From positions 1-64,000 of IMG/VR virus record IMGVR_UViG_3300021338_000003: 64,000 nt of DNA; one strand, 5' to 3'. Position numbers and translations under genes: made by a program. Under the pieces are notes generated by a model that saw only the letters and a list, made by a program, of their open reading frames with translations, had not been told where the DNA came from and made no database searches. Positions 1-27,374 of this stretch are shown here, piece after piece (the stretch's first letter is position 1; every line of letters begins with the position of its first letter).

Positions 1-804
1 GAAAGAAACGCCAGGCTTCTCACCGGTGTGGTTAGTGAAAATCATCGAGACGTTCTTGCGACCAAGAAGACGCTTGATCTTCCGAAGACCTCGGGAGTGA
101 ACACCCGCCGGTCCAGCCATGTTTTCCTTCTCGGGGTCATCGGCAGTCATCTTAGCGATGAGTGCAGCGGCCGAGTCACAGACGATGAGCATCTGGGGAG
201 GACCACCCTCATCCTGGTCCTCCAGCTCGTTGAGGAGGTACACCAGGTAATTGTAGTAATCGTCCCCATTGTCGTGAGCCTCCATAGTGAAAAGCTCATG
301 CTCGGGGTCAACCCTGTTGGCCAGCATATATCCCTTATCCCAACTTTCCTCAGCATCCCATGCATCAACCGGGATACCTGACTCAAGGGTTGCCGCCATG
401 GTCTGGAAGCAGAGGGTAGTCTTACCAGAATGTTCAGGGCCAAAGTACACCACGAGCTTGCCACCGGGAATGCCTCCTCCAGTCACAAGGTCCAGGTAAT
501 GGGACCCGGTGGTCAAGCAATCGCCAACGAGCTTTGGGCGCAGCTTCCGACGCCGGAAACCGAGCTTCTTCCGAGCCTTCTTCATTCCAGCACTTTCACG
601 GTCGATCTTCGCACCTCGACCCTTGTACTGATCACATGCGGGGGTACCCGTACCGACCCCACGTCCGAGGCGACACGAAATACCCGGAGGCAGGCCGCTC
701 TTCTCAAAGAAGGTATCAATGAACGAACACTGACCGCAGAAATGGTCAGCAAGAACCTTGCGACCGTGTGGGGCTTCGGGTATATCGGTTTTCTTGGCAG
801 GCAT
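1..804 (-). CDS. recA: RecA/UvsX-like recombinase, 3' end truncated by the window edge, with an N-terminal 4-Cys extension
   Basis: Absent from the ORF track because it runs off the edge. Manual translation from ATG 804 gives TGSHYLDLVTGGGIPGGKLVVYFGPEHSGKTTL (RecA P-loop), WDAEES, LIVCDSAAAL (Walker B) and MIFTNH. Confidence 0.92.
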   Translation of the reverse strand, partial: MPAKKTDIPEAPHGRKVLADHFCGQCSFIDTFFEKSGLPPGISCRLGRGVGTGTPACDQYKGRGAKIDRESAGMKKARKKLGFRRRKLRPKLVGDCLTTGSHYLDLVTGGGIPGGKLVVYFGPEHSGKTTLCFQTMAATLESGIPVDAWDAEESWDKGYMLANRVDPEHELFTMEAHDNGDDYYNYLVYLLNELEDQDEGGPPQMLIVCDSAAALIAKMTADDPEKENMAGPAGVHSRGLRKIKRLLGRKNVSMIFTNHTGEKPGVSF

Positions 805-809
805 TGTTG

Positions 810-2597
810 CTATACCTCAATATCAGTGATGGGGGTAACGTTCTCGGCCATACAACCAGTACAATTCACTCTGGATCCAAACCAGTTGCGGCTTTCGGAT
901 AGAGTTTCCTTTCCACACTCAGGACAAAGACCCGGAACGACTCGGCTTTGGAACCCAGAAACGACCCCATCCTCCGAGAAATCGAGGCCGATGTCCCCAT
1001 TCACTCGCTCATTCCTGAAATAGGGCTGGGTCTCGATGTCCTTGGGATAGACGAGGGTATAATATGTCTGGGTCCTATGGTCGAATGGTTCCTTAACCCT
1101 AGACCCTTCCTCGATGACCTTCACCAGGGACTTGAGGTTGGACATCAGGGGCTTGATGTCCGCCATTGTGTCAAAATGACCTCGAAACTTAGATGCCACT
1201 ACCATCTCAGCCCAGGAACTGGAGGACAGGATATTAAGAATAAGTTCACCACGCAGAGTGATTTGGCATGTACTGGGTCCAATCTTCTTCAGCAAACCCT
1301 GACTGAACAGACTTGCCATGACCCGACCAAAATTGGATTGGCGGTCCATGGAATACTCCCGGATAGCCGTCCGCAAAAGGTGACCCTCTGACACATTGGG
1401 ACTGGGCACATACCACTTCTGGACCACAGAAGAAGACTCTACAACAAATTCAGACGCCTTGAACCCTCTTTTGGGAAGGACGTTCTTGTCATCTAGGGTT
1501 GGTTTGGACACGAAGAGCATGCTCTTTGACCCCAATGGCCTCCTCTGACCAGGACCATCCCACAACTTCCACTGGATGGTGCTGCCCTTATTTGCAGACT
1601 CCAAAGCGAGGAGGGCCTGTGACCATACCCACTTGTAAATCACACCCTCGTCAGAGGAGGGATGATCAGCAGGAGTCACAGCAGGGTCTACAGGTTGAAT
1701 GAACAGTGGACCCGGACGCTGAGAGACCCCAGCCGTCTTATATCCCGCGGCCTTCAGAACTTTCTTTCCTCCCCGGATGAATTCTGGATCCATACCATCC
1801 TTAGCCCCCAGTACAGCAGTAATCATCCCACTGCTTTCCAATTTCTGTAGAGCTTTGATTATCCTTGAGCCCGGAAGGCCAACCTCAAGGCAAATATCAT
1901 AAACAAGACTGCCCAGGTTGAGCACAGATGGAGTACTACGACCCGTATCCCACTTGGACACAGTGTCTACAGTCAGAAACCCAGATTCGGCCATCCTCTG
2001 GTATCGTCTAGCAATGCCTTCAGACCCAACACATCCAGACTCCAAAACAACGTCCACTGGACCGCTCAATTTGGTCCGGCATATCCACTCGCATGAGACC
2101 ATCCGTCGACTCTGGAACATTGGCACCGCGGCGATGTGGAGAAGCAACAATTCCCCGACCCCAATGTTCACAGAAGTGCCCAAATATTCGGTAAGAGCCC
2201 GGGAGATATGAAGCCTGGAGAGACCTCGGGCTGCCGTCAGAGCAGTATACTGCTCGATGGCCCCCAGGTCAATGGACTGCTTCTTTCGAAGGGCAGAGTC
2301 CAGACCCTTCTTGTCGGTCACCCTGGAGAGGTCCACCCTGGTACATTTGGCGTCGGGGTGGAACGCCTGCACTTGTTTCTGGATGGCCAGAGATAGAGCC
2401 TCGCCTTCGTTGGTCTGGGGGAACCCCAAGTATACCACGTCTGTGTCCAGATTGGCCAACGTGGATACGGTTCCCGGGTGAAGGGATATCCCCTTTGGAC
2501 CCACCTTCATTCGGTGCTCGGGTAGACAAAGCACCGAATCGTGGATACGACCCAGGAATTCAGCCCGGCTAGGGGACTGCACGAAAATAACGGACAT
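810..2597 (-). CDS. Type IA DNA topoisomerase homolog, predicted catalytically inactive, with C-terminal zinc ribbon
   Basis: Colinear with TopA motifs: IFVQSPSRA (IVESPAKA), VYLGFPQTNEGEAL (IYLATDxDREGEAI), LQKLESSGMITA (AQRLYEAGYITY), IYKWVWSQ, PNVSEGHLL. Ends with CPECG...CTGC. Confidence 0.8.
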   Translation of the reverse strand: MSVIFVQSPSRAEFLGRIHDSVLCLPEHRMKVGPKGISLHPGTVSTLANLDTDVVYLGFPQTNEGEALSLAIQKQVQAFHPDAKCTRVDLSRVTDKKGLDSALRKKQSIDLGAIEQYTALTAARGLSRLHISRALTEYLGTSVNIGVGELLLLHIAAVPMFQSRRMVSCEWICRTKLSGPVDVVLESGCVGSEGIARRYQRMAESGFLTVDTVSKWDTGRSTPSVLNLGSLVYDICLEVGLPGSRIIKALQKLESSGMITAVLGAKDGMDPEFIRGGKKVLKAAGYKTAGVSQRPGPLFIQPVDPAVTPADHPSSDEGVIYKWVWSQALLALESANKGSTIQWKLWDGPGQRRPLGSKSMLFVSKPTLDDKNVLPKRGFKASEFVVESSSVVQKWYVPSPNVSEGHLLRTAIREYSMDRQSNFGRVMASLFSQGLLKKIGPSTCQITLRGELILNILSSSSWAEMVVASKFRGHFDTMADIKPLMSNLKSLVKVIEEGSRVKEPFDHRTQTYYTLVYPKDIETQPYFRNERVNGDIGLDFSEDGVVSGFQSRVVPGLCPECGKETLSESRNWFGSRVNCTGCMAENVTPITDIEV

Positions 2598-2606
2598 TTG
2601 CTCTCC

Positions 2607-2930
2607 CTAGAACAGGCCGAGAGGGCGTAGCCTGTCCCCTAGTGAGTTCAGGTCATCCTGATTTAGCAGGACGTCATGGATGATCTTACCATCCTTGAAG
2701 AAGCGAATCCGTGGGGCCCGAGCGATATCCACCAGGTGGCTTTGAGTCTCATCGATAGGCATCACAAACACTGGTTGTGATCCCTTAATACCATGAAGGT
2801 GCTCGACGAACTTCAGATGCTTTTTGGTTGGCGCTACCATCAGAAGGGCAAACTCCTGATTATCCCTGATAAGAGAGGTATATTGGTGCGCATGGACGTA
2901 GGTGAAACCTTCAGACCCCACGAATTGCAT
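2607..2930 (-). CDS. Thioredoxin-fold protein with no cysteines
   Basis: 107 aa. APRIRFFKDGKII matches the thioredoxin cis-Pro/beta hairpin (PTLLLFKNG), and VFVMPIDE resembles VAKLNID. The WCGPC position reads APTKKHL. Confidence 0.55.
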   Translation of the reverse strand: MQFVGSEGFTYVHAHQYTSLIRDNQEFALLMVAPTKKHLKFVEHLHGIKGSQPVFVMPIDETQSHLVDIARAPRIRFFKDGKIIHDVLLNQDDLNSLGDRLRPLGLF

Positions 2931-2938
2931 ATCTTACC

Positions 2939-4237
2939 TCACTCCATCGGCCGACGCTTGCGCCGACGCTTGCGAGGTGCCTCTTCGGAATCAGACTTGG
3001 TCGGAGGGCGCTTGCGCCGACGCTTACGCGGAGGCGGGGCCTCGTCCTCGCCATCAGCAGGAGGACGAGACTTGCGGGTACGAGTCCGAGTCTTGCCTCT
3101 GGCGGACTTGCTACCGGTCTTCTTCGAACGACGGCGACGGCGAGGAGCCTCTTCCTCCTCCTCGTCATCTTCGGAGCCCGTGTCCTTCCAAGCGTTATCG
3201 TTCTCATCCTTGCCTTCATACAACTCACGACGGGGGCGACCGTCGTCGTCATAATACCCAGACCGCTCCATGAACCGACGCATGTTGTCAGGGTCAACGT
3301 CAGCAGCCGCCATCTCTTCCAGAGGAAGAAGACCGGCCTCCTCGATCACCTTCATGCCTACCAGCGCCTTGGGGTTCTCACGACGGAGCTTGAAAATCCC
3401 CATGATATTGGTCTTCTTGCCGTTCTTGAGAATGTAGCGGCCGAAAACCTCTTTTATCTCATCTGAAGTGAGAGGGTGATTTGGAGCGTCATTGCACTTC
3501 TGTACGGAATACATGTCGTCGGCACGACGAGCCGTCTTGTCGAGGCTCATGGTGATGTCAAATCCCTGTTTGGGGTCAGCGGGATCGACACGTTCAAACT
3601 TGGCGATCTTATCGATAGCCTTCATAGGAGTGTAGGGCATTCCAGATTTACCCAGAACACCGAAGTCAGAATTACCCTTGACCACATCCCGGCCGCGGAT
3701 CGTCTTGACGTTGCGCTCGAAGCAGAACCACCAGGTACGCTGATTTGGGCGGGACTTGAAATCATCACACATGGGGCAGCAAAGGCGGTCCAGACGGACG
3801 GCCTTACCATTTTCCATAGCCCGAGGACAGAACCGGTCCTTGTTGCGGTCCGTTCCTCTGGGCACCTCGATCCCCTGTCGCTCCAGGGCGACAGCCTTTA
3901 CGACCTCGGAATCATACCAGCCCTGACCGGTCTTGGGGTTCTTCCAATCAACAACCTTCTCACGGAAGAGGTCGAACTTGGGGCAGAGGAAAGGAACACC
4001 AGGCGGAGCCTTCGGGGGCTTGAACTCCCTGCCCTCGGCGATGGCCTTTTCTCGCATTGACCCGAGCTTGTCAGCGTAGTCGCCGGCTCCCTGAACACAC
4101 CAATGGTTGGCGATGTCCTGGACGGGACCCACAAGCCGGAAACGACGATTCCGGTTATCAGGTACGATGAAGTTGACATCCTCGTCCCAGCGGCTGCGTC
4201 GCTCGCTGCCGCGGTCACTGTAATTGCGCATATTCAA
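2939..4237 (-). CDS. Putative single-stranded DNA-binding protein (T4 gp32-like) with acidic then Arg/Lys-rich tail
   Basis: RRFRLVG...HW, CCPMCD, DPKQGFDITMS and MYSV resemble the gp32 pattern. It lies in the same operon as recA. Confidence 0.6.
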   Translation of the reverse strand: MNMRNYSDRGSERRSRWDEDVNFIVPDNRNRRFRLVGPVQDIANHWCVQGAGDYADKLGSMREKAIAEGREFKPPKAPPGVPFLCPKFDLFREKVVDWKNPKTGQGWYDSEVVKAVALERQGIEVPRGTDRNKDRFCPRAMENGKAVRLDRLCCPMCDDFKSRPNQRTWWFCFERNVKTIRGRDVVKGNSDFGVLGKSGMPYTPMKAIDKIAKFERVDPADPKQGFDITMSLDKTARRADDMYSVQKCNDAPNHPLTSDEIKEVFGRYILKNGKKTNIMGIFKLRRENPKALVGMKVIEEAGLLPLEEMAAADVDPDNMRRFMERSGYYDDDGRPRRELYEGKDENDNAWKDTGSEDDEEEEEAPRRRRRSKKTGSKSARGKTRTRTRKSRPPADGEDEAPPPRKRRRKRPPTKSDSEEAPRKRRRKRRPME

Positions 4238-4350
4238 ATTTTCCTAATGGTGGCGTCATGGTCGTCATGACGGTTGGTGGGATGGTAACCAAGTGGTGGC
4301 GCCATTTAGGCGATGTGGTGTTGTGTTGCAACAATCGCAACACTCAGAAT

Positions 4351-5016
4351 TTAAGGCACGTCACCCACATAAGAGGGCGCCCACAGAATGTCACAGGTAT
4401 CCGTGCCGTTGGCTTCCAAAAGAACCCCCAGAGAGTAGATACGGGACCCAGTTGCGGAGGGCTCTGTGGTTGTGGCCTTGCCGATTGCATTGGACAGGTA
4501 TACCGGATTACCGACATCCCCAGCCACCGGAGTGGAACTGAACTTCGCCGTCACCTGATGCCCAAAGAAATTGTGGACAGATGCGATATCCCCCGACGAT
4601 GTATCGGCCAGAGCCACTGCTAGGGCATTCTGTCGAGTTCCCACATCATTCGAATCGGCCAAAAGCCAGCCCCCAGCAGGTCCAATGCACAAGATTTCCC
4701 CTGCCGACAGAGATGCTTTGGACTCAATGCGAGGACCACGAAGGGCGGCCCAAAGACCCCTCACCAGGTATCCAATTACGGTCTTGTCAATCTGGGTGAG
4801 GTCTGGTCCGTCGGTAGCAGGGCTGCCCACAGGCTTCGGATTCCAGGCAGCGCCGGCCAGAAATTGATTGCCACTGATGTCTACTGTATTCCAATTGGGA
4901 CTGGACCCTACATCGCCTAGGGATGCCCGAACAACGGACAATCCGGCGGGGTCAGCCAGGTAAGCCTCTTCCACTACCTGAATGATGGCTGCCTTCAAGT
5001 CTGCATACTCGCTCAT
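4351..5016 (-). CDS. Putative virion decoration / capsid-cement-like protein
   Basis: C-terminal LSAGEILCI...GNPVYLSNAIGKATTTEP...LGVLL resembles beta-clip head decoration domains. Confidence 0.45.
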   Translation of the reverse strand: MSEYADLKAAIIQVVEEAYLADPAGLSVVRASLGDVGSSPNWNTVDISGNQFLAGAAWNPKPVGSPATDGPDLTQIDKTVIGYLVRGLWAALRGPRIESKASLSAGEILCIGPAGGWLLADSNDVGTRQNALAVALADTSSGDIASVHNFFGHQVTAKFSSTPVAGDVGNPVYLSNAIGKATTTEPSATGSRIYSLGVLLEANGTDTCDILWAPSYVGDVP

Positions 5017-5017
5017 G

Positions 5018-6310
5018 TTACGACCTCTTCATCTGATCGACCGCAATGAGGGCCATCTGTCGGAGTCTTTCACGGACTATGTCCAGTGGGTACATGTCCT
5101 TACTATCCGGGACAAGGTCAAAGGTACCAAAACAGCAACAGATGACCATTCTTTCTTTGTAGGATAGGGCCGACATGTAGTCACTAGCCTGAGTGGATGA
5201 CTTCCGGGACAACGAGTCCTCTACAGACTCACCTTCGTCTACTACGTTGTCTCGAAGCATGGTGCCAGGGTCGTCTTCGGACAGTGGACTTTCAAGACTG
5301 ACTGGACGATTGATCTGAATGGCCTGCATGACTTCGACCACTTGCTCCTCGGTCATCTTCATTTCTTTGGCGATGGCGGGGATGTCGCCTACAATCCCCT
5401 TGTCGTGGCTCATCTGCTCCATCTTGCGGTACACCTGCCAAAGAGGGGCAGGGATCTTGCACATGTTGGCTTCGGTCTTAAGATGAAGCAGGACCGAAGC
5501 CTGAATCCAGTTGCGAGCCAGTCCCGAAAATGCCTTTTCCCGATTGGGGTCGAAATAATTGGCTGCTCGAACCAAACCAGTGGACCCGTGCTGGAAGTTG
5601 TCGAGTATCTGCTGTTCTGACCTTCCATACTTCCGAGCCATCTGCATCACCAAGCGACGGAAGGAGACCAGAACCTTTGTCCTCATGGCCATAGCAATCT
5701 TCATGTGCCACTGTACCTGCTTGACCACCCCGTAGAAGTGAGTTTGTGTCGCCCCAAACCTTTCCTCCATTGACCTCGCTTTCATTTCCAGTCTTGCTAC
5801 TTCCAGTCTCAACTTCGGTCGAACCCTTTCCCCTATATCCTCAAGTCGTTCAACTTCCAGCCGTTTAGGGATGGCTTGGTCAACATACATGCAGTAGCGC
5901 TTGGTGCTTCGGAGGAATGACTCTCCTAGGATGATATACACTGCATAGACGAAAGGAAGAGATTCCTTGTGTTGAACATAGGGGGATATTGTATCCTTTT
6001 CCTTCATCGCTGAGTGATACATGAAGTCCAAACCCAGCTCAATCAGCAGAACTTCCCGCGGCAGATAATCATCAACTTCATACCCACCCCGCTCTCTGAT
6101 GATGTCCTCCCCGTAGAAGATCGTGACATTTTTGAGAACCTTCGCCGCCATCTTGGTGGTATTCTCAATCATGAAGGCATCGAAGAAGGAAGTATGAGCG
6201 CCTATCAGGTCAGCAACGTCTTCAATCACCTCATAGAACTCATGATACCACCACACCATCTCTCTATGGGGTATCAACGGTGCGTTGTATAGGGTTCCGA
6301 GATTGTACAC
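5018..6310 (-). CDS. Phage-encoded sigma70-family RNA polymerase sigma factor
   Basis: Region 2 LVMQMARKY...QHGSTGLVRAANYFDP...FSGLARNWIQ; region 3 PVSLESPLSEDD; region 4 LSYKERMVI...RERLRQM. Confidence 0.88.
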   Translation of the reverse strand: MYNLGTLYNAPLIPHREMVWWYHEFYEVIEDVADLIGAHTSFFDAFMIENTTKMAAKVLKNVTIFYGEDIIRERGGYEVDDYLPREVLLIELGLDFMYHSAMKEKDTISPYVQHKESLPFVYAVYIILGESFLRSTKRYCMYVDQAIPKRLEVERLEDIGERVRPKLRLEVARLEMKARSMEERFGATQTHFYGVVKQVQWHMKIAMAMRTKVLVSFRRLVMQMARKYGRSEQQILDNFQHGSTGLVRAANYFDPNREKAFSGLARNWIQASVLLHLKTEANMCKIPAPLWQVYRKMEQMSHDKGIVGDIPAIAKEMKMTEEQVVEVMQAIQINRPVSLESPLSEDDPGTMLRDNVVDEGESVEDSLSRKSSTQASDYMSALSYKERMVICCCFGTFDLVPDSKDMYPLDIVRERLRQMALIAVDQMKRS

Positions 6311-6358
6311 TAGACCCCCCTAGGTCCTACAGGTTAAAGGAAACACACGGGTAACCGC

Positions 6359-6979
6359 ATGCCTGAAAACATACCGAAGCTGAACCTCGGTCAGATAATA
6401 CGCCTTACACCCAAGCAGATACGCCAAAGGGGCGTCAGGACGTGCTCAGTGAGGGTGTCCAGGGTGTCCGTTGAACTCGATGACTTCGGTGCCTCGAAGG
6501 TTGTCCAATCGCGTTCGCTCTGTATTGACAGAGTACACGTTTCCTCTATTCGATTCTACCATTCGGAAGGAATTCCATCCTCCCTGGTAGCACTTCGAAA
6601 CCTCCGTCGAGAAATCCCAACGGGCCGGGAACTCTACGGAGTACCGGTATGGGTATCCTGTGATTGTGAATGGTTTCTGTATGACTGCGAGGTTGCCCTG
6701 AACCGCTATGGGTGCACAGACATCCGGTTCTCCAACGGTGACTACCCCGTTGTACGAAACAGTGGGATGGTCCCTCGCCTATGCAAGCATCTGATTGCAT
6801 TGGCTCCGCTCGCCGTGGCGGCCAAGGAGAAGAGCAACCGGCCGGTGTCTTCTCCTACGTACCCTGTGCGACCTGGACCATTGCCCAGTCAGCTGCAACG
6901 TCAACTTGAAAGGGCCAAAGACCTTCCGAGTAGGGAAGAACTCGATGAAGCCATGAAGGGTGTCACCGATTTTCTTTGA
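6359..6979 (+). CDS. SWIM-type zinc finger protein
   Basis: VSCDCEWF...RLCKH (CxC...CxH). Confidence 0.7.
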   Translation: MPENIPKLNLGQIIRLTPKQIRQRGVRTCSVRVSRVSVELDDFGASKVVQSRSLCIDRVHVSSIRFYHSEGIPSSLVALRNLRREIPTGRELYGVPVWVSCDCEWFLYDCEVALNRYGCTDIRFSNGDYPVVRNSGMVPRLCKHLIALAPLAVAAKEKSNRPVSSPTYPVRPGPLPSQLQRQLERAKDLPSREELDEAMKGVTDFL

Positions 6980-7250
6980 CGATGTCCCATAGAACCTGGG
7001 TTCTATTGGCCTGCATCTTTCGGATGCCTGCATCGATCAAGGCAACCCGCTTGTAGTCATCATCTGAAAGGACGTGAAGAGACTTGCGCTTCTCCCGACC
7101 GACCAAGGCACCCTCTCGGTGGTGGATGTGGACCGTCGAATCGGGGTCCACATCCAGGGTCTCAACCCACCCGATATAATGGCGGTCAGTGACCTCACAG
7201 TAGAAAAACACCCGAGTCCAATCGGGAGTAACCTCGGCAACATGTGGCAT
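6963..7250 (-). CDS. Hypothetical protein
   Basis: 95-aa ORF with an AGGTGA-type RBS upstream; fills the gap between genes. Confidence 0.55.
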   Translation of the reverse strand: MPHVAEVTPDWTRVFFYCEVTDRHYIGWVETLDVDPDSTVHIHHREGALVGREKRKSLHVLSDDDYKRVALIDAGIRKMQANRTQVLWDIVKENR

Positions 7251-7287
7251 GAATCACCTCTAATGGATGGAGTTTAGTGGAGACTGC

Positions 7288-8115
7288 ATGCCCGAATGGC
7301 CCGAAGTCAAAGTGGTAGTCCACCAGCTCCAAAGACTGGTAGGGTCTGTCACTTCAAGATCCTGGTCCAACTCCAAGTACAACCCAGGCAGAAAACTCGG
7401 CGGGATAGAAGGACTGAAGGTCAAGAGAATCCGGCAGCGGGCCAAGTTCATCGAATTTCACCTTCGGCAAGGTTCGACCCGCAAAGTAGTCATCTTCCAT
7501 CTTGGCATGTCAGGAAAGCTTGGTATCGTTCCTCTGAGTAGCCCAGCTCTACAGGGTGTTCACTGCCACGCGTGGATGGCTTTCGAACACAAAGAGGCCC
7601 TAGTGTTCGTGGATCCCCGAAAGTTCGGGCGGGCCATGGTCATTGAAGACCCCAGCGTATATCGCTTCGAGTTATACAAAAATATAGGCCCCGAAGCGGC
7701 GGCTATTGACTTCAACACCTTTCACAGTCGCGTGTCCCAGAAACCGAAATGGACGGTCAAGAAGGCTTTGCTTGACCAAAGCCTGGTTTCAGGATACGGC
7801 AATATATATGCGAATGAAATCTTGCATTATGCCCAGGTTCATCCCCACTCAAGGATAGAGCTTGTTCCCCGAGAGCGATGGTTGGCAATCCACGGAGCAA
7901 CCCCACGTCTGTTTGACCATGCCTTCCGATGCGGAGGTTCTAGTCCCCAAAGCTTCCGAGGGCCAAATGGCGAGTCGGGGACCTTCCAAAACCACCACAG
8001 GATATACGGAAGGGAGGGAAAACCTTGTAACAGGTGTGGCAGGCCCATAATGAAAGGGTACCTCGATGGGAGGAGCACCTTTTGGTGCCAATGTTCAACA
8101 ATCTTCGATTATTAG
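7288..8115 (+). CDS. mutM: Formamidopyrimidine-DNA glycosylase / AP lyase (Fpg/MutM)
   Basis: Start reassigned to ATG 7288 (GGAG RBS), giving the catalytic N-terminus MPEWPEV. Also HLGMSG, DPRKFG, H2TH LLDQSLVSGYGNIYANE and zinc finger CNRC...WCQC. Confidence 0.93.
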   Translation: MPEWPEVKVVVHQLQRLVGSVTSRSWSNSKYNPGRKLGGIEGLKVKRIRQRAKFIEFHLRQGSTRKVVIFHLGMSGKLGIVPLSSPALQGVHCHAWMAFEHKEALVFVDPRKFGRAMVIEDPSVYRFELYKNIGPEAAAIDFNTFHSRVSQKPKWTVKKALLDQSLVSGYGNIYANEILHYAQVHPHSRIELVPRERWLAIHGATPRLFDHAFRCGGSSPQSFRGPNGESGTFQNHHRIYGREGKPCNRCGRPIMKGYLDGRSTFWCQCSTIFDY

Positions 8116-8123
8116 GAGAGGCC

Positions 8124-8375
8124 ATGCGTATGGTGGTTTTCTATTTGCTTCTGACTGGCTGTGTTTCCGAAGACACGGCTGTGTCTTATGCTCGGCGAGC
8201 CCACCCCGAGTGCTCCGGTCATGACGCCCTGTCACACCGATGGGCGGAAACCAGCCAGACCGAGGTGTCTATGGTCTGTGGGCCACCTGACCAGCCGGTG
8301 CGCCGTTCCATCACCGTCAAATGTGTGCATGGATTCGGCATTTTCGCCGATACCACCTGTCACGAAAACAACTGA
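8124..8375 (+). CDS. Small lipoprotein
   Basis: Start ATG 8124 after AGGAG. MRMVVFYLLLTG-C is a lipobox; the mature part is Cys-rich. Confidence 0.6.
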   Translation: MRMVVFYLLLTGCVSEDTAVSYARRAHPECSGHDALSHRWAETSQTEVSMVCGPPDQPVRRSITVKCVHGFGIFADTTCHENN

Positions 8376-8387
8376 GGGAGGTCCCAC

Positions 8388-9254
8388 GTGGCCAAGGTTA
8401 CGCTCAAATCTGCTGCCTATCTCAGGGGTGAGAAGGTGGTGTCCATCTTGGCCGTGTCCGAAGGCCAAATCCAATCCTCGCTCTTCTTCCGGCTGGGTAT
8501 GAAGTGCATGGAGAGAAAGAACGAGGATGGGGATGTTAGGGAGATTTGGTACTATGACCACCCCACCAACATCATGGCCATCCGCAATCTCAAGATGTCT
8601 TGGAAGGCCCAGGGAGTTGACCTCACTCTAGACTTGACCGATGCACTTGGTAATTCCATGGTTGACCTTTTGCATCCACGGGCGGTGAGATTCTATTCCA
8701 AGGAATTTCATCAAAAGATGGGTACTGACCCCATCTGGCAGGCACCCACTGCCGTGGACAAAATGGCAATGGGCCTCATAGCCAAGAAGCATCCACATCT
8801 GGCATCGGCTGCCGTCCTCATCCTCATTGAGGATTATGACCCCGAAAAGAAGGCAGAGCAAATCGCTCGAACAGGAAAGAAGAGCGAGGTTTGGGGATTC
8901 TGCCAGAAGATGAGCAAGACCGAGAAATCTCACACTGGGTTTGATTTCAAGATCACTCTTTGTCACGAGATTTGGCAACGGTTCGATCATGCCCACAAGC
9001 GCTATATGCTGGACCATGAGTTGATGCACTGTGGCCGAACCGAAAAGGGCAGGTGGGTATTGCTGGACCATGACGTTCAGCTCTTCAGCCAAGAGGTAGA
9101 AGAGTACAGCAACGTCATCCCTGCCCTCAATAGAGAAGTTAGCGCTCTATTGTTCAAGAAGAAGAGTGCCGACGCCGAGGGTGATACCAAGAGCGCTGAT
9201 AAGAAGGTACGGAGGCGCAAGAAGAAGCGCAAGCCCAAACCTGAATCCGACTGA
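8388..9254 (+). CDS. Phage metallopeptidase-domain protein
   Basis: DFKITL...LDHELMHCG...LLDHDVQLF (HExxH plus downstream HD); basic C-terminal tail. Confidence 0.75.
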   Translation: MAKVTLKSAAYLRGEKVVSILAVSEGQIQSSLFFRLGMKCMERKNEDGDVREIWYYDHPTNIMAIRNLKMSWKAQGVDLTLDLTDALGNSMVDLLHPRAVRFYSKEFHQKMGTDPIWQAPTAVDKMAMGLIAKKHPHLASAAVLILIEDYDPEKKAEQIARTGKKSEVWGFCQKMSKTEKSHTGFDFKITLCHEIWQRFDHAHKRYMLDHELMHCGRTEKGRWVLLDHDVQLFSQEVEEYSNVIPALNREVSALLFKKKSADAEGDTKSADKKVRRRKKKRKPKPESD

Positions 9255-9271
9255 TGCGGTAGGATTCGGAC

Positions 9272-9463
9272 ATGGCAAACAATCCTGCACTACAGGATAA
9301 GATAGAGTGGGCCCCAGACGATTGGGACTACCACTATGTGCCGTTGACTGATACCCACATCTTCGTTCATGACCTCACCGGACATTCGGTCATCATAAAC
9401 GGAGACTTCGATATAGACGAGATGAAAGAATACCTCAAGGAGTGGTCAAATGCACATTCTTGA
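9272..9463 (+). CDS. Hypothetical protein
   Basis: 63-aa ORF in the operon with an AGGA RBS. Confidence 0.55.
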   Translation: MANNPALQDKIEWAPDDWDYHYVPLTDTHIFVHDLTGHSVIINGDFDIDEMKEYLKEWSNAHS

Positions 9464-22889: not shown

Positions 22890-25800
22890 ATGACTACCCG
22901 ACGCAAAAACAGCCTAACAAAGATGTTCGGGTGGATGAAGAACAGCCCTCTCATCCGCAAGGTTGTAGCCTTTGCCCTATCTCGAAAGAGGGGTGGTCCC
23001 TCAGCCGCCCTGGCAGTCGAGCATCAGGGTGGTCAGGACCTAGATGACCGTTATGGTCCTCTACCCGTAGATTCCGATAACTATATTCTCGACCCCTATA
23101 CCGGTGAAAGACTTCAGGTTGAAAACGGTTGGGAAGATACCGATACGGTTGGGGACCACGAACCGTATTTGGGTGCCATCGGTCGTAGTGATGGTTCTAT
23201 TCGGATCGGAAGCGGCGCACCTGCCTCCCAAAGGCGACAAGGTCTAGACCAACTAGACTTCACTAATTATTTGCAGGTCACCCTTTCAGAAGACGCTCAC
23301 AGCTTCATTGCGCAAGCCACGATGACTGGGTCTCCGACGCTAGAAAACCCGGTCTTCGGGATCGATGCATCCGATTACCGGTGGGGTATTCAGGTAGTCG
23401 GGCCGAACGAGATTAGTAACCGCATTTTCGATAACACCGTGGTACGTGCTACTGCCACCATCACGGGTGCCAGCGCATTCGCATCTGGTGTGACGTTCAC
23501 CGCTGGAGGTGGTGCCGACTCTGATGGTGATGTATCCCTAGCCGCGTGGGATGACACGGGCACGGAAGTTAACACCCCAGATACCGACAACTTCGCCGGT
23601 ACCGTCACCAGCCTGGCGGGTGAGTACACTATTGGCCGTGGCCGCGGAGGCGGTGATTTCGTCAATGGGACCATCAATGTATGGGGTGGCTTCGACGGTG
23701 ACCATTATGATTCTGCGACGCTTTCAACAATGGAGGCATCCATTCGTGCCGGGATGGATGTAGATACCCTAGCCGGGACGTATGGCGGGGCTTGGTCGGA
23801 TGGTATAACACCGGGCGCTTACTCCCGCATCGCAACCGAGAAACTTTTCAGTCTATCAGGGGCTGGGTCGAAGCCAGTGGTTGCTCGCCCGGGCACATCA
23901 GGAGAAACATACACCCAGCCACAGGATATCGATGGTCTAATCGGTGATTGGGATTGCTTGCGCGGTGCTACCTATACCGGTACCACCCTGACGGGTTGCT
24001 ATGATTATGGTCCAAATGAGTGGGACCTGACTCACGGTAGCACCGTAGGCCAACGTACTGTCGAGATGCTGGGTCGCAACGTATTCCTTCCAGGTACCGG
24101 TGGAGGGACTTACCTGGAGCGTGCGATCACTACAACCATCGAAGACTTCACCGTTACGTGCTCGATCCCGATCAGGTCGTACAGCTCGACGGGCCGTTCG
24201 TATTTCAGCATGAACGTAGCGGCCATCGCCACGTGGGGACTTCAGATCCAGCAGGGGCCGTCTGTTGGTACAATGGCCATCCTTGACGATTCTGGTACTA
24301 CGGTTGCAACCATACCTCATGGTGCCCGTACCTCGGGCAACGGTGATGCTGCTCATGCGATCCTGGTGTTTCGACGTACAGCTGGTGGGGATGTTGTTGT
24401 CGACTGCTGGTATGACCAGGACGCGGGAGGCGGGTTGGTACGGTCCACACAGGTGGTAGCCTCCGATACCTTCTCTGCGTCGATTGACGTTACTGGAGTG
24501 GCAGTCGGCGGAAGGTATGGAACAAGCGTAGGGTCGTGGAACAGCTTTTCAGGCGTGCACCGTGTTACTATGCACGACAGCGCCATATCTGACGATGACA
24601 TGATTGCCGTGGTCAAGGGTCACGCTGCCCGACTGGGTTGGGACACCGATTTGATTAAGCCTCTGGTTCTACCGGCCAAGGCTGCGCGTTACGTCGGCGG
24701 GAAGACGCTCGAAGATAGCGTAGGCGAGCTTCCGAAGGACGCAGACGGTTACTATCTTACGCGGAATGGGTTGTCCTACCTCACGGTAGACGATGGGTTC
24801 GACATTGGCGATGTCGTCGGTGAACCCAAGCTCTACGGTCTACTCACTGCACAGGTGATAGGAAACCCGGCCACCCAGCGCCGCTCGGGCTTCGACAACA
24901 ATGACGACCTCAACTACGCGCTCGTGACTCTCGATACGAGCGACATCTCCTTCCTCGTCTCGGCCAACCGTGCAACGAACACCTATGACGCCATCTTCGA
25001 TTCAACAACGGCTGACCCGCGAGTCCAGTTATCGACTGGTCCAGGAGGCATCGCCACACTGCGGATGCGCACCACCGACGGAGGCGTCACCGAATTTGCT
25101 GATACAGCAGGAATTGTCCCGCCTGGGCAGAACTTCTTCGGCGGTACCTTGGATGGTAGCACGGGAGACATGCTGTCGAAGGTGTGGGATAGCTCCGGTG
25201 CCCCATTGGGCACAGGGTCTCACACCGGAACGGTAGCTGTCGACATTTCCGGTCCCCTCTACTTGGGTCGGCAATTCAACAACGCATATGCCTGGGATAG
25301 CGGCATCTTCTGGGCCATGGGTTGGGACGGGACGGTCATGTCCGAAGCTGACCTTGACGCCATCGTAGCGGCAATGCAGGCCGGTGCGGACATCGATGAC
25401 ATCAGGACCACCTACGGTGTCACGTTGGCCACGGACGGTATCGTCTGCGGTGCCTACGACCCCGATAACCCTACGGTCCTCTTCACCGAAGCTGGTGCAG
25501 GCGAGTCTGTCCGACTCCACAACACGGCTCCGGCACTCCCCGCAGTCGCCGCCCGCTACATCGGAGGGAAGACTCTGAATGACTCCATCGGGGAGCTGTT
25601 CAAGGATGATGACGGCTACTACCAGTCGCGCCTCACCGGCGAATACCTGACTTTGGACGATGGATTCGGGTCAGGGGATGCGATTGGTCCGGAGTACATG
25701 TATGGCCTGAAGACCGCCGTAGTAGAGAACAACGGCACACCAATCGCACGTGGTGGGTTGCGCCGGAACGGGTTTACATTCGATAGCTCTGGCAGTCAGT

Positions 25801-27338
25801 ACATCGGATTCAACCTCACCTCCGAAGAGGCTCACAGCTTCCTCGTCTACCTGGAAGGCGATCCGTCTGTGACGAGCCCCAGCACCCAGTTCGTGTTTGG
25901 CTTTGATGCCACGGCTCCTCTCGGGGCAGGCTGGCAAGGCTTGCTGTCGAACTTGGAACCCAACCTTCGGACTTACAACGCTGCGACCACCGAGGATGTA
26001 GCCGCACGTGTACTGATTTCACAACCGGTCACTGCCAATGACCTCCAGTGGATCGGCGGCTTCCACGACGGCACCGACACCGAGCTATCGTGCTGGGATG
26101 ATGTCGGTGCACAGCTGGGGGTCACTGGCACAAGTACCCGCTCTGTGCCCGTCACGCTTACGGCGCAGCCCTACTTCCTCGGCGGTCGGCCTGGCGGTGG
26201 TGTGCCTCTCCAGTACGCCGAAGTGCTGGAAGTCTACGGATGGGACGGTGGTGCAGGGAAGACTTTCTCGGAGCTGCAGGCAGTCATCGACGCATCCATT
26301 GCAGGCGGAGAACCCTCCGCCAATGCACCGGGTGCAGACCTGGCCTCCGACGGCATCATCTGCGGTGCCTACGACCCGCTGGACACGACCATCCTCTTCA
26401 CCGAATCCGGGGCAGGGGAGTCGGTGCGTGCTCACGTCACTGCACCCGTGGTACCGGCTCTCGTCGCACGCTACAACGGAGGTAAGACTCTCACGGATGC
26501 AACAGGTGAGCTGCCCAAGGACGAGAACGACTACTATAAGTCGCGCCTTACCAACGAGTACCTCTCTGTCGATACGGGATTCGCCGACACAGACGTTGTG
26601 GGTGAGCCGAAGGTGTACGGTCTTCTGACTGCCACGGTACATGGCGCGCCTGCAACTGCGCGACGTTCGGGCTTCGATGCCTGCACCGACGCAGACTACA
26701 TCGAGATCCTCCTGTCTGACTCTGACTACGGGAGTGCGCTGGCGCTGACTCGACAGACATCCACCCCGGCTGTACCGCAGGGATTCCTCTTCGGGGCAGG
26801 TACTGACCCTCGATGGGGAATGCTGTACACCTCGGGTGATTACCGAACCCAGACGGTCAACAGTGGTGTACTGCAGACCGACATAGCCGGAGCACTGTCC
26901 ACCACGGCGGCTGATCGGTTCATCGCTGCCACTGTAGACAACGCGAGCGGAACTCTTACGCAGACGGCACACGCATGGGATGAGACAGGAACGCCACTGG
27001 CAGGCTCTCCGGATCAGGACACTAGCGGTGCCCACGGCGGGGACCTTTCCGGAGTCTATTACCTTGGTCGGACCAAGAGCACCGGGTATGCCTACACCAG
27101 TGGAACAGTCCGAATTGCTCTCGGATGGGATGGAGCGACTTTGTCCGATGCGCAGCTGCAGTCTGTCGTAGATGACATCCTGGCTGGAGAGGATATCGAC
27201 ACTGTAGCCAGCAACGCTGCTGTGATGCCTGCCCTGGCGACAGACGGACTCGTTTGTGGAGTCTATGACCCCTACGATACCGCCCTACTCTACACTTTGG
27301 GAGCCTCAGGTGCTGACGTTACCCTGACAACTCCGTAA
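22890..27338 (+). CDS. Giant repetitive virion fibre/adhesin with ConA/LamG-like modules
   Basis: 1482 aa, rich in G/T/A/D. Four units of about 290 aa start with ARYxGGKTLxDxxGELxKD (first copy degenerate) and end with DGxxxGxY, plus one different LamG-like insert. Confidence 0.7.
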   Translation: MTTRRKNSLTKMFGWMKNSPLIRKVVAFALSRKRGGPSAALAVEHQGGQDLDDRYGPLPVDSDNYILDPYTGERLQVENGWEDTDTVGDHEPYLGAIGRSDGSIRIGSGAPASQRRQGLDQLDFTNYLQVTLSEDAHSFIAQATMTGSPTLENPVFGIDASDYRWGIQVVGPNEISNRIFDNTVVRATATITGASAFASGVTFTAGGGADSDGDVSLAAWDDTGTEVNTPDTDNFAGTVTSLAGEYTIGRGRGGGDFVNGTINVWGGFDGDHYDSATLSTMEASIRAGMDVDTLAGTYGGAWSDGITPGAYSRIATEKLFSLSGAGSKPVVARPGTSGETYTQPQDIDGLIGDWDCLRGATYTGTTLTGCYDYGPNEWDLTHGSTVGQRTVEMLGRNVFLPGTGGGTYLERAITTTIEDFTVTCSIPIRSYSSTGRSYFSMNVAAIATWGLQIQQGPSVGTMAILDDSGTTVATIPHGARTSGNGDAAHAILVFRRTAGGDVVVDCWYDQDAGGGLVRSTQVVASDTFSASIDVTGVAVGGRYGTSVGSWNSFSGVHRVTMHDSAISDDDMIAVVKGHAARLGWDTDLIKPLVLPAKAARYVGGKTLEDSVGELPKDADGYYLTRNGLSYLTVDDGFDIGDVVGEPKLYGLLTAQVIGNPATQRRSGFDNNDDLNYALVTLDTSDISFLVSANRATNTYDAIFDSTTADPRVQLSTGPGGIATLRMRTTDGGVTEFADTAGIVPPGQNFFGGTLDGSTGDMLSKVWDSSGAPLGTGSHTGTVAVDISGPLYLGRQFNNAYAWDSGIFWAMGWDGTVMSEADLDAIVAAMQAGADIDDIRTTYGVTLATDGIVCGAYDPDNPTVLFTEAGAGESVRLHNTAPALPAVAARYIGGKTLNDSIGELFKDDDGYYQSRLTGEYLTLDDGFGSGDAIGPEYMYGLKTAVVENNGTPIARGGLRRNGFTFDSSGSQYIGFNLTSEEAHSFLVYLEGDPSVTSPSTQFVFGFDATAPLGAGWQGLLSNLEPNLRTYNAATTEDVAARVLISQPVTANDLQWIGGFHDGTDTELSCWDDVGAQLGVTGTSTRSVPVTLTAQPYFLGGRPGGGVPLQYAEVLEVYGWDGGAGKTFSELQAVIDASIAGGEPSANAPGADLASDGIICGAYDPLDTTILFTESGAGESVRAHVTAPVVPALVARYNGGKTLTDATGELPKDENDYYKSRLTNEYLSVDTGFADTDVVGEPKVYGLLTATVHGAPATARRSGFDACTDADYIEILLSDSDYGSALALTRQTSTPAVPQGFLFGAGTDPRWGMLYTSGDYRTQTVNSGVLQTDIAGALSTTAADRFIAATVDNASGTLTQTAHAWDETGTPLAGSPDQDTSGAHGGDLSGVYYLGRTKSTGYAYTSGTVRIALGWDGATLSDAQLQSVVDDILAGEDIDTVASNAAVMPALATDGLVCGVYDPYDTALLYTLGASGADVTLTTP

Positions 27339-27374
27339 GGTCGCAGCTTCTTCGTAAGAACTCGGAGAAGCAAA

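What the first reader, a model, noticed from the sequence alone, without database searches (positions are those of the whole stretch)
1..4237. Candidate new recombination module: SSB, Cys-less thioredoxin, dead topoisomerase IA and RecA in one operon
Seen: four minus-strand genes are separated by only 8, 9 and 5 nt. The outer two are a gp32-like SSB and an intact RecA. The inner two look like full-length enzyme folds stripped of catalytic residues. Known: type IA topoisomerases are ssDNA-binding toroids that act with recombinases (Top3-Rmi1, TopB-RecQ), and T7 DNA polymerase uses thioredoxin as a redox-independent processivity factor. Inference: this may be a multi-subunit ssDNA or D-loop handling complex in which both pseudoenzymes are structural parts.
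Basis: partly seen in the sequence, partly recalled or inferred. Interest (0 to 1): 0.82.

Follow-up and report, generated by a model that had tools for sequence, protein, structure and literature searches.

The report
Dead topoisomerase in phage recombination operon
A 250-kb marine phage carries a conserved gene string (single-strand-binding protein, cysteine-free thioredoxin-fold protein, type IA topoisomerase homologue, RecA) in which the topoisomerase has lost every catalytic residue but is still kept, while related phages have a catalytically intact copy at the same position.

Summary
Four minus-strand genes lie 8, 9 and 5 nt apart, each with its own ribosome-binding site. RecA/UvsX is clear by sequence. 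The 107-aa protein has a thioredoxin fold and no cysteine. The 595-aa protein is a true but very divergent type IA topoisomerase homologue that lacks the Toprim acidic residues, the catalytic Tyr/Arg and the DNA-groove motifs; only a C-terminal Cys4 ribbon stays conserved. The gp32-type SSB call is supported only indirectly.

New findings: the same gene order recurs in 11 other uncultured phage contigs, but in 0 of 78 other RecA-bearing viral contigs. Five relatives keep a complete catalytic set, three of them shown in the same slot beside RecA. The ancestral module therefore held a working topoisomerase next to RecA, and catalysis was lost at least twice. The thioredoxin-fold partner lacks CxxC even beside live topoisomerases.

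The inner genes evolve about 3-4 times faster than RecA but stay open at saturating divergence, so they are not neutral. A physical complex is neither supported nor refuted: the complex prediction gave no answer. I found no description of this module in the literature. Verdict: a real, conserved, undescribed variant of a phage recombination module. Its mechanism is inferred.

The parts
2939..4231 (-). Probable gp32-type single-strand DNA-binding protein, 430 aa. It has candidate Zn ligands (H43, C83, C152/C153/C156) and a C-terminal tail made of an acidic run followed by Arg/Lys-rich blocks.
   Evidence: Atlas features 0.89 with 192/256 shared against gp32 clusters, and TM-by-row 0.57-0.69. 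The family profile reaches P0139/P0148, which hit phrog_15004 'single strand DNA binding protein'; the syntenic L028 protein hits it at 7e-18. No Pfam, PDB or hhalign support. Start codon and RBS.
2607..2930 (-). Thioredoxin-fold protein, 107 aa, with no cysteine. The cis-Pro loop (P73, motif RxPRIR) is conserved, and APTKKH stands in place of the WCGPC active site.
   Evidence: Translation. AF2 with a 9-sequence alignment gave pLDDT 83.6 and a beta-alpha-beta-alpha-beta-alpha-beta-beta-alpha topology. Foldseek top 50 PDB hits are all thioredoxins; BFVD and Atlas agree. The family alignment has no CxxC in any member and P73 is invariant. A profile search against PDB gave thioredoxin as top hit, but only at E=0.17.
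810..2597 (-). Type IA topoisomerase homologue, 595 aa, catalytically dead. Toprim Glu is Q7. DxDxE is P60-Q-T62-N-E64. Catalytic Tyr is A261 (window 1815-1817) and the partner Arg is L263. The GRVQS, HEAIRP and GRPSTY motifs are lost.
   Evidence: Atlas structure TM 0.75 to bacterial Topo I over residues 1-552. phmmer to P0125 at 7e-20, and P0125 carries PF01131. Family profile against T. maritima Topo I 2gai at 9e-122. A profile built only from live members scores P0003 at 87.7 bits and gives the same residue mapping. Motif table. No direct Pfam, PHROG or PDB hit for P0003 itself.
852..926 (-). C-terminal Cys4 zinc ribbon of the Topo-like protein (C558, C561, C579, C582). This is the best-conserved part of the dead forms.
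   Evidence: The four Cys are invariant or nearly invariant in the 13-member alignment. In the dead group the C-terminal 115 residues keep 0.84-1.2 of the conservation seen in live forms, against about 0.45 in the catalytic regions.
1..804 (-). N-terminal 268 residues of a RecA/UvsX-like recombinase (full length 462 aa). Walker A is GPEHSGKT, the catalytic Glu is E152, and Walker B includes D210/S211. It has an N-terminal Cys4 extension (C23, C26, C44, C57).
   Evidence: Pfam RecA 3e-18 for the partial protein and 2.9e-30 for the full one; PHROG UvsX-like 6.3e-40. Alignment A7. Full gene in L002 and at the other contig end.
805..809 (-). 5-nt spacer between the Topo-like gene and RecA. The GAGG ribosome-binding site lies inside the last Topo-like codons.
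   Evidence: Sequence read.
2598..2606 (-). 9-nt spacer (GGAGAGCAA) between the Trx-like and Topo-like genes, containing the ribosome-binding site.
   Evidence: Sequence read.
2931..2938 (-). 8-nt spacer between the SSB-like and Trx-like genes. The ribosome-binding site overlaps the SSB stop codon.
   Evidence: Sequence read.
4323..4343 (-). Hairpin (7-bp stem GTGTTGC/GCAACAC, 7-nt loop) in the 119-nt gap upstream of the SSB start. It may be a boundary or regulatory element of the gene string.
   Evidence: Sequence read. The consensus terminator scan did not call it, and its counts do not exceed shuffles.
4351..6310 (-). Upstream context on the same strand: a 221-aa protein of unknown function (4351-5016) and a sigma-70-like factor (5018-6310).
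   Evidence: Pfam Sigma70_r2/r3 and PHROG sigma factor 3.3e-24. A sigma-like gene sits at the same relative position in L007 and L018.

Best explanation
The four genes form the translationally coupled core of a larger recombination/repair operon in a ~250-kb marine jumbo phage. The order is SSB, Trx-fold, Topo IA-like, RecA, then an HTH protein, a small protein and an SbcD/Mre11-like nuclease. The cassette is old and is shared by a clade of uncultured large phages.

In its ancestral form the third gene encoded a working type IA topoisomerase. It probably served the recombinase by passing strands where RecA pairs DNA without free ends, or by dissolving joints, as E. coli Topo III does with RecA. 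In the window's lineage, and independently in at least one other, all catalytic and DNA-groove residues were lost. The full-length protein, its predicted toroid fold and its C-terminal zinc ribbon were kept.

The most likely reading is that the protein now works without chemistry. It would be a zinc-ribbon-mediated ssDNA- or protein-binding scaffold for the SSB/RecA/nuclease machinery, with the cysteine-free thioredoxin-fold protein as its small, non-redox partner.

Shown: gene order, spacing, folds, homology, loss of catalytic residues, conservation of synteny, live relatives, faster but non-neutral evolution. Inferred: the recombination role, the scaffold mechanism and the Trx-Topo partnership.
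For: Tight coupling: spacers of 8, 9 and 5 nt with ribosome-binding sites. In relatives the Trx/Topo and Topo/RecA genes often overlap by 4-23 nt.

Synteny: the Topo-like gene lies next to RecA, or separated by 1-2 inserted genes, in all 12 loci. The Trx-like gene lies directly upstream in 10 of 11 assessable loci. An SSB-like gene lies upstream in 8 of 9 loci with enough upstream DNA (none recognised in L015), and an SSB-style tail is visible in 2 more. An SbcD-like gene lies downstream in 9. Background: 0 of 78 other RecA-bearing viral contigs have a Topo-like gene within 6 kb.

Homology and death. Five relatives have a complete E / DxDxE / Y-x-R set, and three of them are seen beside RecA.

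Independent losses: on the RecA tree, live and dead forms interleave with at least 3 changes. On the Topo tree a single dead clade is rejected, AU p=0.0016.

Not neutral: ORFs of about 500-650 aa remain intact although 4-fold sites are at random identity (22-35%) and pS is 0.67-0.85, while pN for Topo is 0.56-0.59. Constraint has shifted to the C-terminal zinc ribbon.

Precedents: RecA activates Topo III catenation (PMC13760219). Yeast Top3 helps end resection without needing its catalytic activity (PMC7017083).
Against: There is no direct evidence for any physical interaction; the Topo-like + Trx-like complex prediction scored 0.00, which is 'no answer'. The window's Topo-like protein is the most degenerate of all: it keeps 39 of 101 residues invariant in live forms and has the longest branch, and it has lost the canonical ssDNA-groove motifs, so toroid-type DNA binding is doubtful. 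Both inner genes evolve 3-4 times faster than RecA, which also fits relaxed selection or an arms race. Most dead forms share a Pro after the Tyr position, so the number of independent losses may be smaller than the trees suggest, and long branches affect both trees. No expression data: no RNA run was listed. Only 64 kb of the 250 kb was examined, so a second, live topoisomerase or a UvsY-type mediator elsewhere in the genome is not excluded.
Confidence: 0.5

Rival explanations
1. Anti-host decoy or dominant-negative. The dead topoisomerase, possibly with the Trx-fold protein, mimics a host type IA topoisomerase. It would titrate host partners or blunt a host defence that senses or uses topoisomerase or recombination intermediates. 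Its place in the operon would then reflect only the timing of expression.
For: It evolves fast relative to its neighbours (dN 1.06 against 0.24 for RecA), and catalysis was lost repeatedly while the fold was kept; both are typical of conflict-driven pseudoenzymes. Phages are known to modulate host Topo I (T4 gp55.2, PMC4396842, listed). Nucleus-forming phages import host Topo I (PMC13282480).
Against: The position between SSB and RecA is strictly conserved, with translational coupling, over very deep divergence and in lineages where the enzyme is still live. None of the four proteins was scanned against the defence library, so no link to defence systems was looked for.
Confidence: 0.15
2. Same-operon neighbours without a joint mechanism. 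The Topo-like and Trx-like proteins have some other DNA-related role, such as architectural DNA binding, replication or regulation, and are merely co-transcribed with the recombination genes.
For: The surrounding region is a general replication/repair block: clamp loader, SbcC, Fpg glycosylase, ligase, DnaB, 5'-3' exonuclease and a sigma factor. The complex prediction gave no support.
Against: The immediate order Trx-Topo-RecA is far more conserved than the wider neighbourhood, which is rearranged between loci. Gene overlaps suggest coupled translation.
Confidence: 0.15
3. A decaying remnant. After catalysis was lost the gene is drifting toward loss and has no selected function.
For: Conservation in the dead group is flat at about 0.24 identity along most of the protein, and all active-site and DNA-groove motifs are lost. 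The window's copy has the longest branch.
Against: Nine dead or crippled copies remain full-length open reading frames of 507-646 aa although synonymous sites are saturated. Four zinc-ribbon cysteines and several structural Gly/Leu/Pro residues are invariant. The topoisomerase fold is still predicted. Ribosome-binding sites and tight spacing are kept.
Confidence: 0.1
4. Still an enzyme. The protein cleaves or passes DNA strands with non-canonical residues.
For: The full-length toroid fold is predicted. One acidic residue (E64) of the Toprim motif and the zinc ribbon remain.
Against: The Toprim Glu, two Asp, the catalytic Tyr, its partner Arg and three DNA-binding motifs are all replaced by residues that cannot do the chemistry (Q, P, T, A, L). 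Two independent alignments agree on this.
Confidence: 0.03

Closest known systems
Bacterial type IA topoisomerases (Topo I / Topo III; Pfam PF01751 Toprim + PF01131 Topoisom_bac + zinc ribbons)
   Same: Homologous and of the same predicted fold. The family profile hits T. maritima Topo I at 9e-122, and the Atlas structure gives TM 0.75. A C-terminal Cys4 ribbon is retained.
   Different: The window's protein lacks the Toprim Glu and Asp residues, the catalytic Tyr and Arg, and the conserved DNA-groove motifs. It gives no Pfam hit on its own. It is encoded between a Trx-fold gene and RecA in a phage.
E. coli RecA with topoisomerase III or I (catenation/hemicatenation of paired DNA without free ends)
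   Same: This is a recombinase and a type IA topoisomerase acting on the same intermediates (PMC13760219). The live relatives (L009, L010, L015) encode such a pair as adjacent, often overlapping genes.
   Different: In E. coli the genes are unlinked and the reaction needs topoisomerase chemistry. In the window the chemistry is gone.
Eukaryotic Sgs1/BLM-Top3-Rmi1 (dissolvasome)
   Same: A type IA topoisomerase with a small accessory subunit works with recombination proteins. Top3's catalytic activity is not needed for its contribution to long-range end resection (PMC7017083), which is a precedent for a structural role. An Mre11/SbcD-like nuclease gene is in the same phage operon.
   Different: Rmi1 is an OB-fold protein, not a thioredoxin fold. 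No RecQ-family helicase is adjacent. Top3 itself remains catalytically competent.
T7 DNA polymerase gp5 with E. coli thioredoxin
   Same: A thioredoxin fold is used as a redox-independent accessory of a DNA enzyme (from general knowledge). The cis-Pro loop, which forms part of the partner-binding surface of thioredoxin, is the most conserved feature of the phage family.
   Different: T7 borrows the host's redox-competent thioredoxin. Here the phage encodes its own CxxC-less copy, and no polymerase is involved. Binding to any partner is not shown.
T4 recombination module (gp32, UvsX, UvsY, gp46/47)
   Same: A gp32-type SSB (probable), a UvsX/RecA-like recombinase and SbcCD-like nuclease genes sit within a T4-like replication gene set: clamp loader, DnaB-like helicase, RNase H-like exonuclease and ligase.
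   Different: No UvsY was recognised in the cluster. Two extra genes (Trx-fold, Topo IA-like) sit between the SSB and the recombinase. RecA carries an N-terminal Cys4 extension.
Topoisomerase-like proteins of mobile elements that lack catalytic residues (type IIB; Topo VIII/Mini-A group)
   Same: This is a precedent for topoisomerase homologues on mobile elements that appear non-catalytic (PMC7671362; only its title and abstract were seen).
   Different: It is a different, unrelated topoisomerase family (IIB against IA) and has no link to RecA.

Membership tests
Type IA topoisomerase | Homology and toroidal four-domain fold (Toprim + Topoisom_bac) | tested here: met
   Atlas structure TM 0.75 over residues 1-552. 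P0003 to P0125 at 7e-20, and P0125 has PF01131. Family profile against 2gai at 9e-122. Live-only profile scores P0003 at 87.7 bits. The AF2 single-sequence model failed (pLDDT 39).
Type IA topoisomerase | Toprim acidic cluster (Glu, DxDxE) for Mg2+ | tested here: not met
   Q7 replaces the Glu. P60 and T62 replace the two Asp. Only E64 is kept.
Type IA topoisomerase | Catalytic tyrosine and adjacent arginine (Y-x-R) | tested here: not met
   GMITAVLGA stands where live relatives have GRITYHRTD: A261 for Tyr and L263 for Arg.
Type IA topoisomerase | Conserved ssDNA-groove motifs (GRVQS, HEAIRP, GRPSTY) | tested here: not met
   They are replaced by GVGEL, PLFIQP and DRQSNF.
Type IA topoisomerase | DNA relaxation or cleavage activity | not testable with these tools
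   Needs a biochemical assay.
Thioredoxin | Thioredoxin fold with the cis-proline loop | tested here: met
   AF2 pLDDT 83.6. Top 50 PDB hits are all thioredoxins with TM about 0.6. Atlas TM 0.70-0.76. P73 is invariant.
Thioredoxin | CxxC redox active site | tested here: not met
   P0002 has no cysteine at all. No CxxC occurs at that position in any of the 9 aligned family members or in the L028 copy, read by eye from its first 40 residues.
gp32-type SSB (PF08804) | Sequence or profile match to the gp32 family | tested here: not met
   No Pfam or PHROG hit for P0001. The profile search against PDB was empty. hhalign against a 7-member gp32 alignment gave E=0.09 over 19 columns.
gp32-type SSB (PF08804) | Fold or feature similarity and an SSB-annotated bridge | tested here: inconclusive
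   Atlas features 0.89 with 192 shared, and 79 of 100 hits in the gp32 set. TM by row is 0.57-0.69, but the Atlas model is poor (pLDDT 0.49). Relatives P0139/P0148 and the syntenic L028 protein hit phrog_15004 'single strand DNA binding protein' at 2e-4 and 7e-18.
gp32-type SSB (PF08804) | Zn-binding His/Cys3 site | tested here: inconclusive
   H43, C83 and C152/C153/C156 are present in the window's protein but are replaced in L016 and L018.
RecA/UvsX recombinase | RecA core with Walker A, Walker B and catalytic Glu | tested here: met
   Pfam RecA 2.9e-30 and PHROG UvsX-like 6.3e-40. GPEHSGKT, E152 and D210/S211 are invariant in alignment A7.
RecA/UvsX recombinase | Gln gamma-phosphate sensor (the N-Q motif of bacterial RecA) | tested here: not met
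   The motif reads T-N-H in the window and its 7 closest relatives. N-Q is kept in L011, L015, L017 and a bacterial RecA. The consequence is unknown.
Topoisomerase-recombinase complex (Top3-Rmi1-like or Topo III-RecA-like) | Physical or functional interaction between the topoisomerase homologue, its small partner and the recombinase | tested here: inconclusive
   Complex prediction for Topo-like + Trx-like scored 0.00, 'no answer'. Other pairs were not run. Only synteny and gene overlap support it.

The most novel reading that the evidence does not exclude
A clade of large marine and environmental phages uses a type IA topoisomerase fold plus a non-redox thioredoxin-fold subunit as a dedicated accessory of its RecA/SSB machinery. 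This would be a new class of recombination mediator or joint-processing factor. Its essential contribution would be structural, which would explain why topoisomerase chemistry was discarded repeatedly while the protein and its zinc ribbon were kept.
Probability: 0.25. Interest if true: 0.8.

Novelty: new variant of a known kind. Interest (0 to 1): 0.62.

Why it matters
Catalytically dead type IA topoisomerases have not, to my knowledge and in the literature I could search, been described as a conserved protein family. Here one sits in a fixed position beside RecA, and closely comparable phages keep the live enzyme.

This offers a natural live-versus-dead series for asking what a type IA topoisomerase contributes to recombination beyond strand passage. 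That question is already raised by yeast Top3 in end resection and by the newly reported RecA-Topo III collaboration in E. coli.

It also adds a second case, after T7, of a thioredoxin fold recruited by a phage for DNA work without redox chemistry. Finally, it assigns folds and likely roles to four previously unannotated genes of an uncultured group of jumbo phages.

Tried and rejected
- AF2 on P0003 without an alignment failed (pLDDT 39). I relied on the Atlas model and on profiles instead.
- The first complex-prediction job was lost. The rerun scored 0.00, which the tool says is neither for nor against binding.
- dN/dS could not be estimated. Synonymous sites are saturated against the three closest relatives (pS 0.67-0.85; 4-fold identity 22-35%). 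The second copy of the same genome differs by 1 nt in 4237, so there is no population signal.
- There are no close relatives. megablast and tblastn against GenBank phages found nothing for the region, P0001 or P0003. The 5.8-billion-protein search found only P0003 itself. The exhaustive search found 9 relatives, the closest at 29% identity.
- gp32 homology could not be shown by Pfam, PHROG, PDB profile search or hhalign against a gp32 alignment built from T4 and six other phages.
- The Trx alignment was too variable for a DNA-pattern scan.
- The best GenBank 'phage' hit for a live-type topoisomerase (Microcystis phage MaAM05) has a cellular-looking neighbourhood and no RecA nearby. I rejected it as a relative.
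- The promoter and terminator scan gave no more sites than shuffles.
- No RNA sequencing run was listed.
- Literature searches for a dead type IA topoisomerase or for this module in phages found nothing.

Full report
**What is there**

The window is the start of a 250,817-bp IMG/VR contig from a seawater metagenome. The same genome was assembled independently in an ENA sample. That copy, L002, differs by 1 nt in 4237 and supplies the DNA beyond window position 1. The RecA gene is split across the contig ends, so the assembly is circularly permuted.

Four minus-strand ORFs lie at 2939-4237, 2607-2930, 810-2597 and 1-804, with gaps of 8, 9 and 5 nt. Each start is preceded by a GGAG/GAGG-type site, partly inside the previous gene. 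The first gene most likely starts at ATG 4231, not at the mechanical TTG at 4237.

In L002 the same-strand string continues after RecA with overlapping genes: a 161-aa HTH protein, a 101-aa protein and a 341-aa SbcD/Mre11-like phosphoesterase. Upstream lie a 221-aa protein and a sigma-70-like factor. The rest of the window holds a T4-like replication set: clamp loader, SbcC, DnaB-like helicase, 5'-3' exonuclease, ATP-dependent ligase and Fpg glycosylase.

**The four proteins**

- **RecA/UvsX.** It is recognised directly by Pfam (2.9e-30 full length) and PHROG (UvsX-like, 6.3e-40). Walker A, the catalytic Glu and Walker B are invariant across relatives.
- **The 107-aa protein.** It has no Pfam or PHROG hit and not one cysteine. 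An AF2 model built on nine family members (pLDDT 83.6) has the thioredoxin topology. Its 50 best PDB matches are all thioredoxins, and BFVD and the ESM Atlas agree. The family keeps the cis-proline loop (P73 invariant), and no member has CxxC.
- **The 595-aa protein.** It has no direct Pfam, PHROG or PDB sequence hit, but the evidence for type IA topoisomerase homology is strong:
  - Its Atlas model superposes on bacterial topoisomerase I at TM 0.75 over residues 1-552.
  - An exhaustive HMMER search found nine relatives. The closest, at 7e-20, carries PF01131.
  - A profile of the 13-member family hits T. maritima topoisomerase I at 9e-122.
  - A profile built only from the catalytically complete relatives scores the window's protein at 87.7 bits.
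- **Catalytic residues of the 595-aa protein.** Two independent alignments give the same mapping:
  - Toprim Glu is Q7.
  - DxDxE is P60-Q-T62-N-E64.
  - Tyr-x-Arg is A261-V-L263.
  - The GRVQS, HEAIRP and GRPSTY motifs are gone.
  - A C-terminal Cys4 ribbon (C558, C561, C579, C582) is conserved throughout the family.
- **The 430-aa protein.** The gp32 call is the weakest.
  - Against: Pfam, PHROG, PDB profile search and hhalign against a purpose-built gp32 alignment found nothing significant.
  - For: Atlas feature similarity to gp32 clusters (0.89, 192 shared features) and partial structural matches.
  - For: a sequence bridge. The family profile reaches P0139/P0148, which hit phrog_15004 'single strand DNA binding protein', and the syntenic protein of L028 hits it at 7e-18.
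  - I call it a probable gp32-type SSB.

**Relatives and synteny**

I used the full RecA as a handle, together with the Topo-like relatives, and fetched eleven further loci from uncultured phage contigs: L006-L011, L015-L018 and L028.

- **Topo-like and RecA.** The Topo-like gene is immediately upstream of RecA in nine of the twelve loci, counting the window's own. In the other three it is separated by one or two inserted genes (L007, L017, L018).
- **Trx-like.** This gene is directly upstream of the Topo-like gene in 10 of 11 assessable loci and absent in L015. It often overlaps the Topo-like gene by 4 nt.
- **SSB-like.** This gene precedes the Trx-like gene in the eight loci where such a gene is recognised; none was recognised in L015. 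In L009 and L010 the visible end of the upstream ORF has the same acidic/basic tail.
- **SbcD-like.** This gene follows RecA in nine loci.
- **Background.** Among 79 other RecA-bearing IMG/VR contigs, only L028 had a Topo-like gene within 6 kb, and L028 turned out to carry the whole module. That leaves 0 of 78. GenBank phages have no relative of this module.

**Live and dead versions**

Five family members have a complete Glu / DxDxE / Tyr-His-Arg set: L009, L010, L015, P0129 and P0130. Eight have lost two or more of these residues, with different replacements at the Tyr position (A, S, F, F, T, H; two keep Tyr but lack the Arg and the Asp residues). L028 is crippled: it has lost one Asp, and its motif reads Y-P-Y.

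- On a RecA tree rooted with bacterial RecA, live and dead loci interleave, which needs at least three changes.
- On the Topo tree, a single dead clade is rejected (AU p=0.0016), which needs at least two changes.
- Regaining a full active site is implausible. Catalysis was therefore lost at least twice.
- Caveats: long branches affect both trees, and most dead forms share a Pro after the Tyr position. L018 clearly lost activity on its own.

The Trx-fold partner is CxxC-less next to live topoisomerases as well. It was therefore never a redox enzyme within this module's visible history.

**Selection**

Against the three closest relatives, amino-acid identity falls in this order: RecA (73/58/57%), SSB (53/45/42%), Trx-like (34/30/31%), Topo-like (30/26/27%).

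Synonymous sites are saturated, so dN/dS cannot be computed. dN against L006 is 0.24 for RecA, 0.44 for SSB, 0.65 for Trx-like and 1.06 for Topo-like.

The inner genes therefore evolve 3-4 times faster than RecA. Even so, they remain full-length ORFs with detectable similarity at saturating divergence, which neutral sequence would not.

In the dead group, conservation collapses in the catalytic regions to about 0.45 of the level in live forms. It is retained in the C-terminal 115 residues that contain the zinc ribbon (ratio 0.84-1.2). The window's copy is the most degenerate, keeping 39 of 101 residues that are invariant in live forms.

**How it most likely works**

- **Ancestral state (inferred).** A phage type IA topoisomerase worked with the recombinase. 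This matches the reported RecA-activated catenation by E. coli Topo III on substrates without free ends (PMC13760219). It also matches D-loop dissolution by Top3-Rmi1 (PMC7017083).
- **Present state in the window (inferred).** A non-catalytic protein is retained for binding, through its zinc ribbon and toroid, to ssDNA or to the SSB/RecA/SbcCD machinery. The Trx-fold protein would be its small subunit, possibly using the conserved cis-Pro surface as thioredoxin does with T7 polymerase (general knowledge).
- **Precedent.** Yeast Top3 contributes to end resection without needing its catalytic activity (PMC7017083).
- **Test of binding.** The one complex prediction I could run gave no answer.
- **Rivals.** The alternatives are an anti-host decoy, an unrelated DNA role with mere co-transcription, a decaying gene and residual enzymatic activity. 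They are weighed in the rival section.

**Novelty**

Searches of the held literature found no description of a dead type IA topoisomerase family or of this cassette. These included a comparative survey of 224 jumbo phages and a 2026 review of jumbo phages. I rate it a new variant of a known kind: a phage recombination module with two undescribed accessory proteins, one of them a recurrently inactivated topoisomerase.

Noticed in passing
window 634-738 (minus strand; RecA residues 23-57); alignment A7: The RecA/UvsX-like protein has an N-terminal extension of about 90 aa with four cysteines (C23, C26, C44, C57). These are conserved in the window and its seven closest relatives and absent in L011, L015, L017 and bacterial RecA. 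It looks like a zinc ribbon fused to the recombinase.
   Followed up: partly
window 28-33 (minus strand; RecA residues 258-259): The bacterial RecA N-Q motif (gamma-phosphate sensor Gln) reads N-H in this clade, while more distant relatives keep N-Q. The consequence for ATP coupling is unknown.
   Followed up: no
window 2939-3240 (minus strand; C-terminal ~100 residues of the SSB-like protein): The tail has a poly-acidic run followed by Arg/Lys-rich blocks (PRKRRRKR-type). The same alternating acidic/basic style is found in all relatives and is extreme in L011, with long poly-D and poly-K blocks. It differs from the purely acidic tail of T4 gp32.
   Followed up: partly
window 4323-4343: A 7-bp inverted repeat with a 7-nt loop lies 8 nt after the stop of the 221-aa gene, in the only sizeable gap (119 nt) of the gene string. 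It has no T-run. It could be a processing or regulatory site.
   Followed up: no
window 5018-6310 (minus strand): A phage sigma-70-like factor (regions 2 and 3) is encoded two genes upstream of the SSB. A sigma-like gene sits in the same relative position in L007 and L018.
   Followed up: partly
L028 (IMGVR_UViG_3300049049_000146, 423,825 bp), 2714-9367: A 424-kb phage contig carries the same module: a phrog_15004 SSB, a Trx-like gene, a Topo-like gene with Y-P-Y and no second zinc ribbon, RecA, two small genes and an SbcD-like gene. The cassette therefore extends to very large phages.
   Followed up: partly
L007 7484-10008: A 93-aa gene and a 748-aa AAA ATPase gene are inserted between the Topo-like gene and RecA in this relative only.
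   Followed up: no
window 22890-31139 (plus strand): Two very large adjacent ORFs of 1482 aa and 1254 aa. The first has no family hit. The second has a SASA-type carbohydrate esterase domain and a weak tail-protein match. They are probably host-recognition proteins.
   Followed up: no
window ends; L005 (contig 240100-250817): RecA residues 224-462 are encoded at the other end of the contig, overlapping the window's part. This indicates a circular or terminally redundant assembly.
   Followed up: yes
L019 (GenBank MW495066.1, 'Microcystis phage MaAM05', 152343-168301): The topA neighbourhood in this record carries psbU, wecB, rppH, mtnP and uvrA. It looks like cellular rather than phage DNA.
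   Followed up: no
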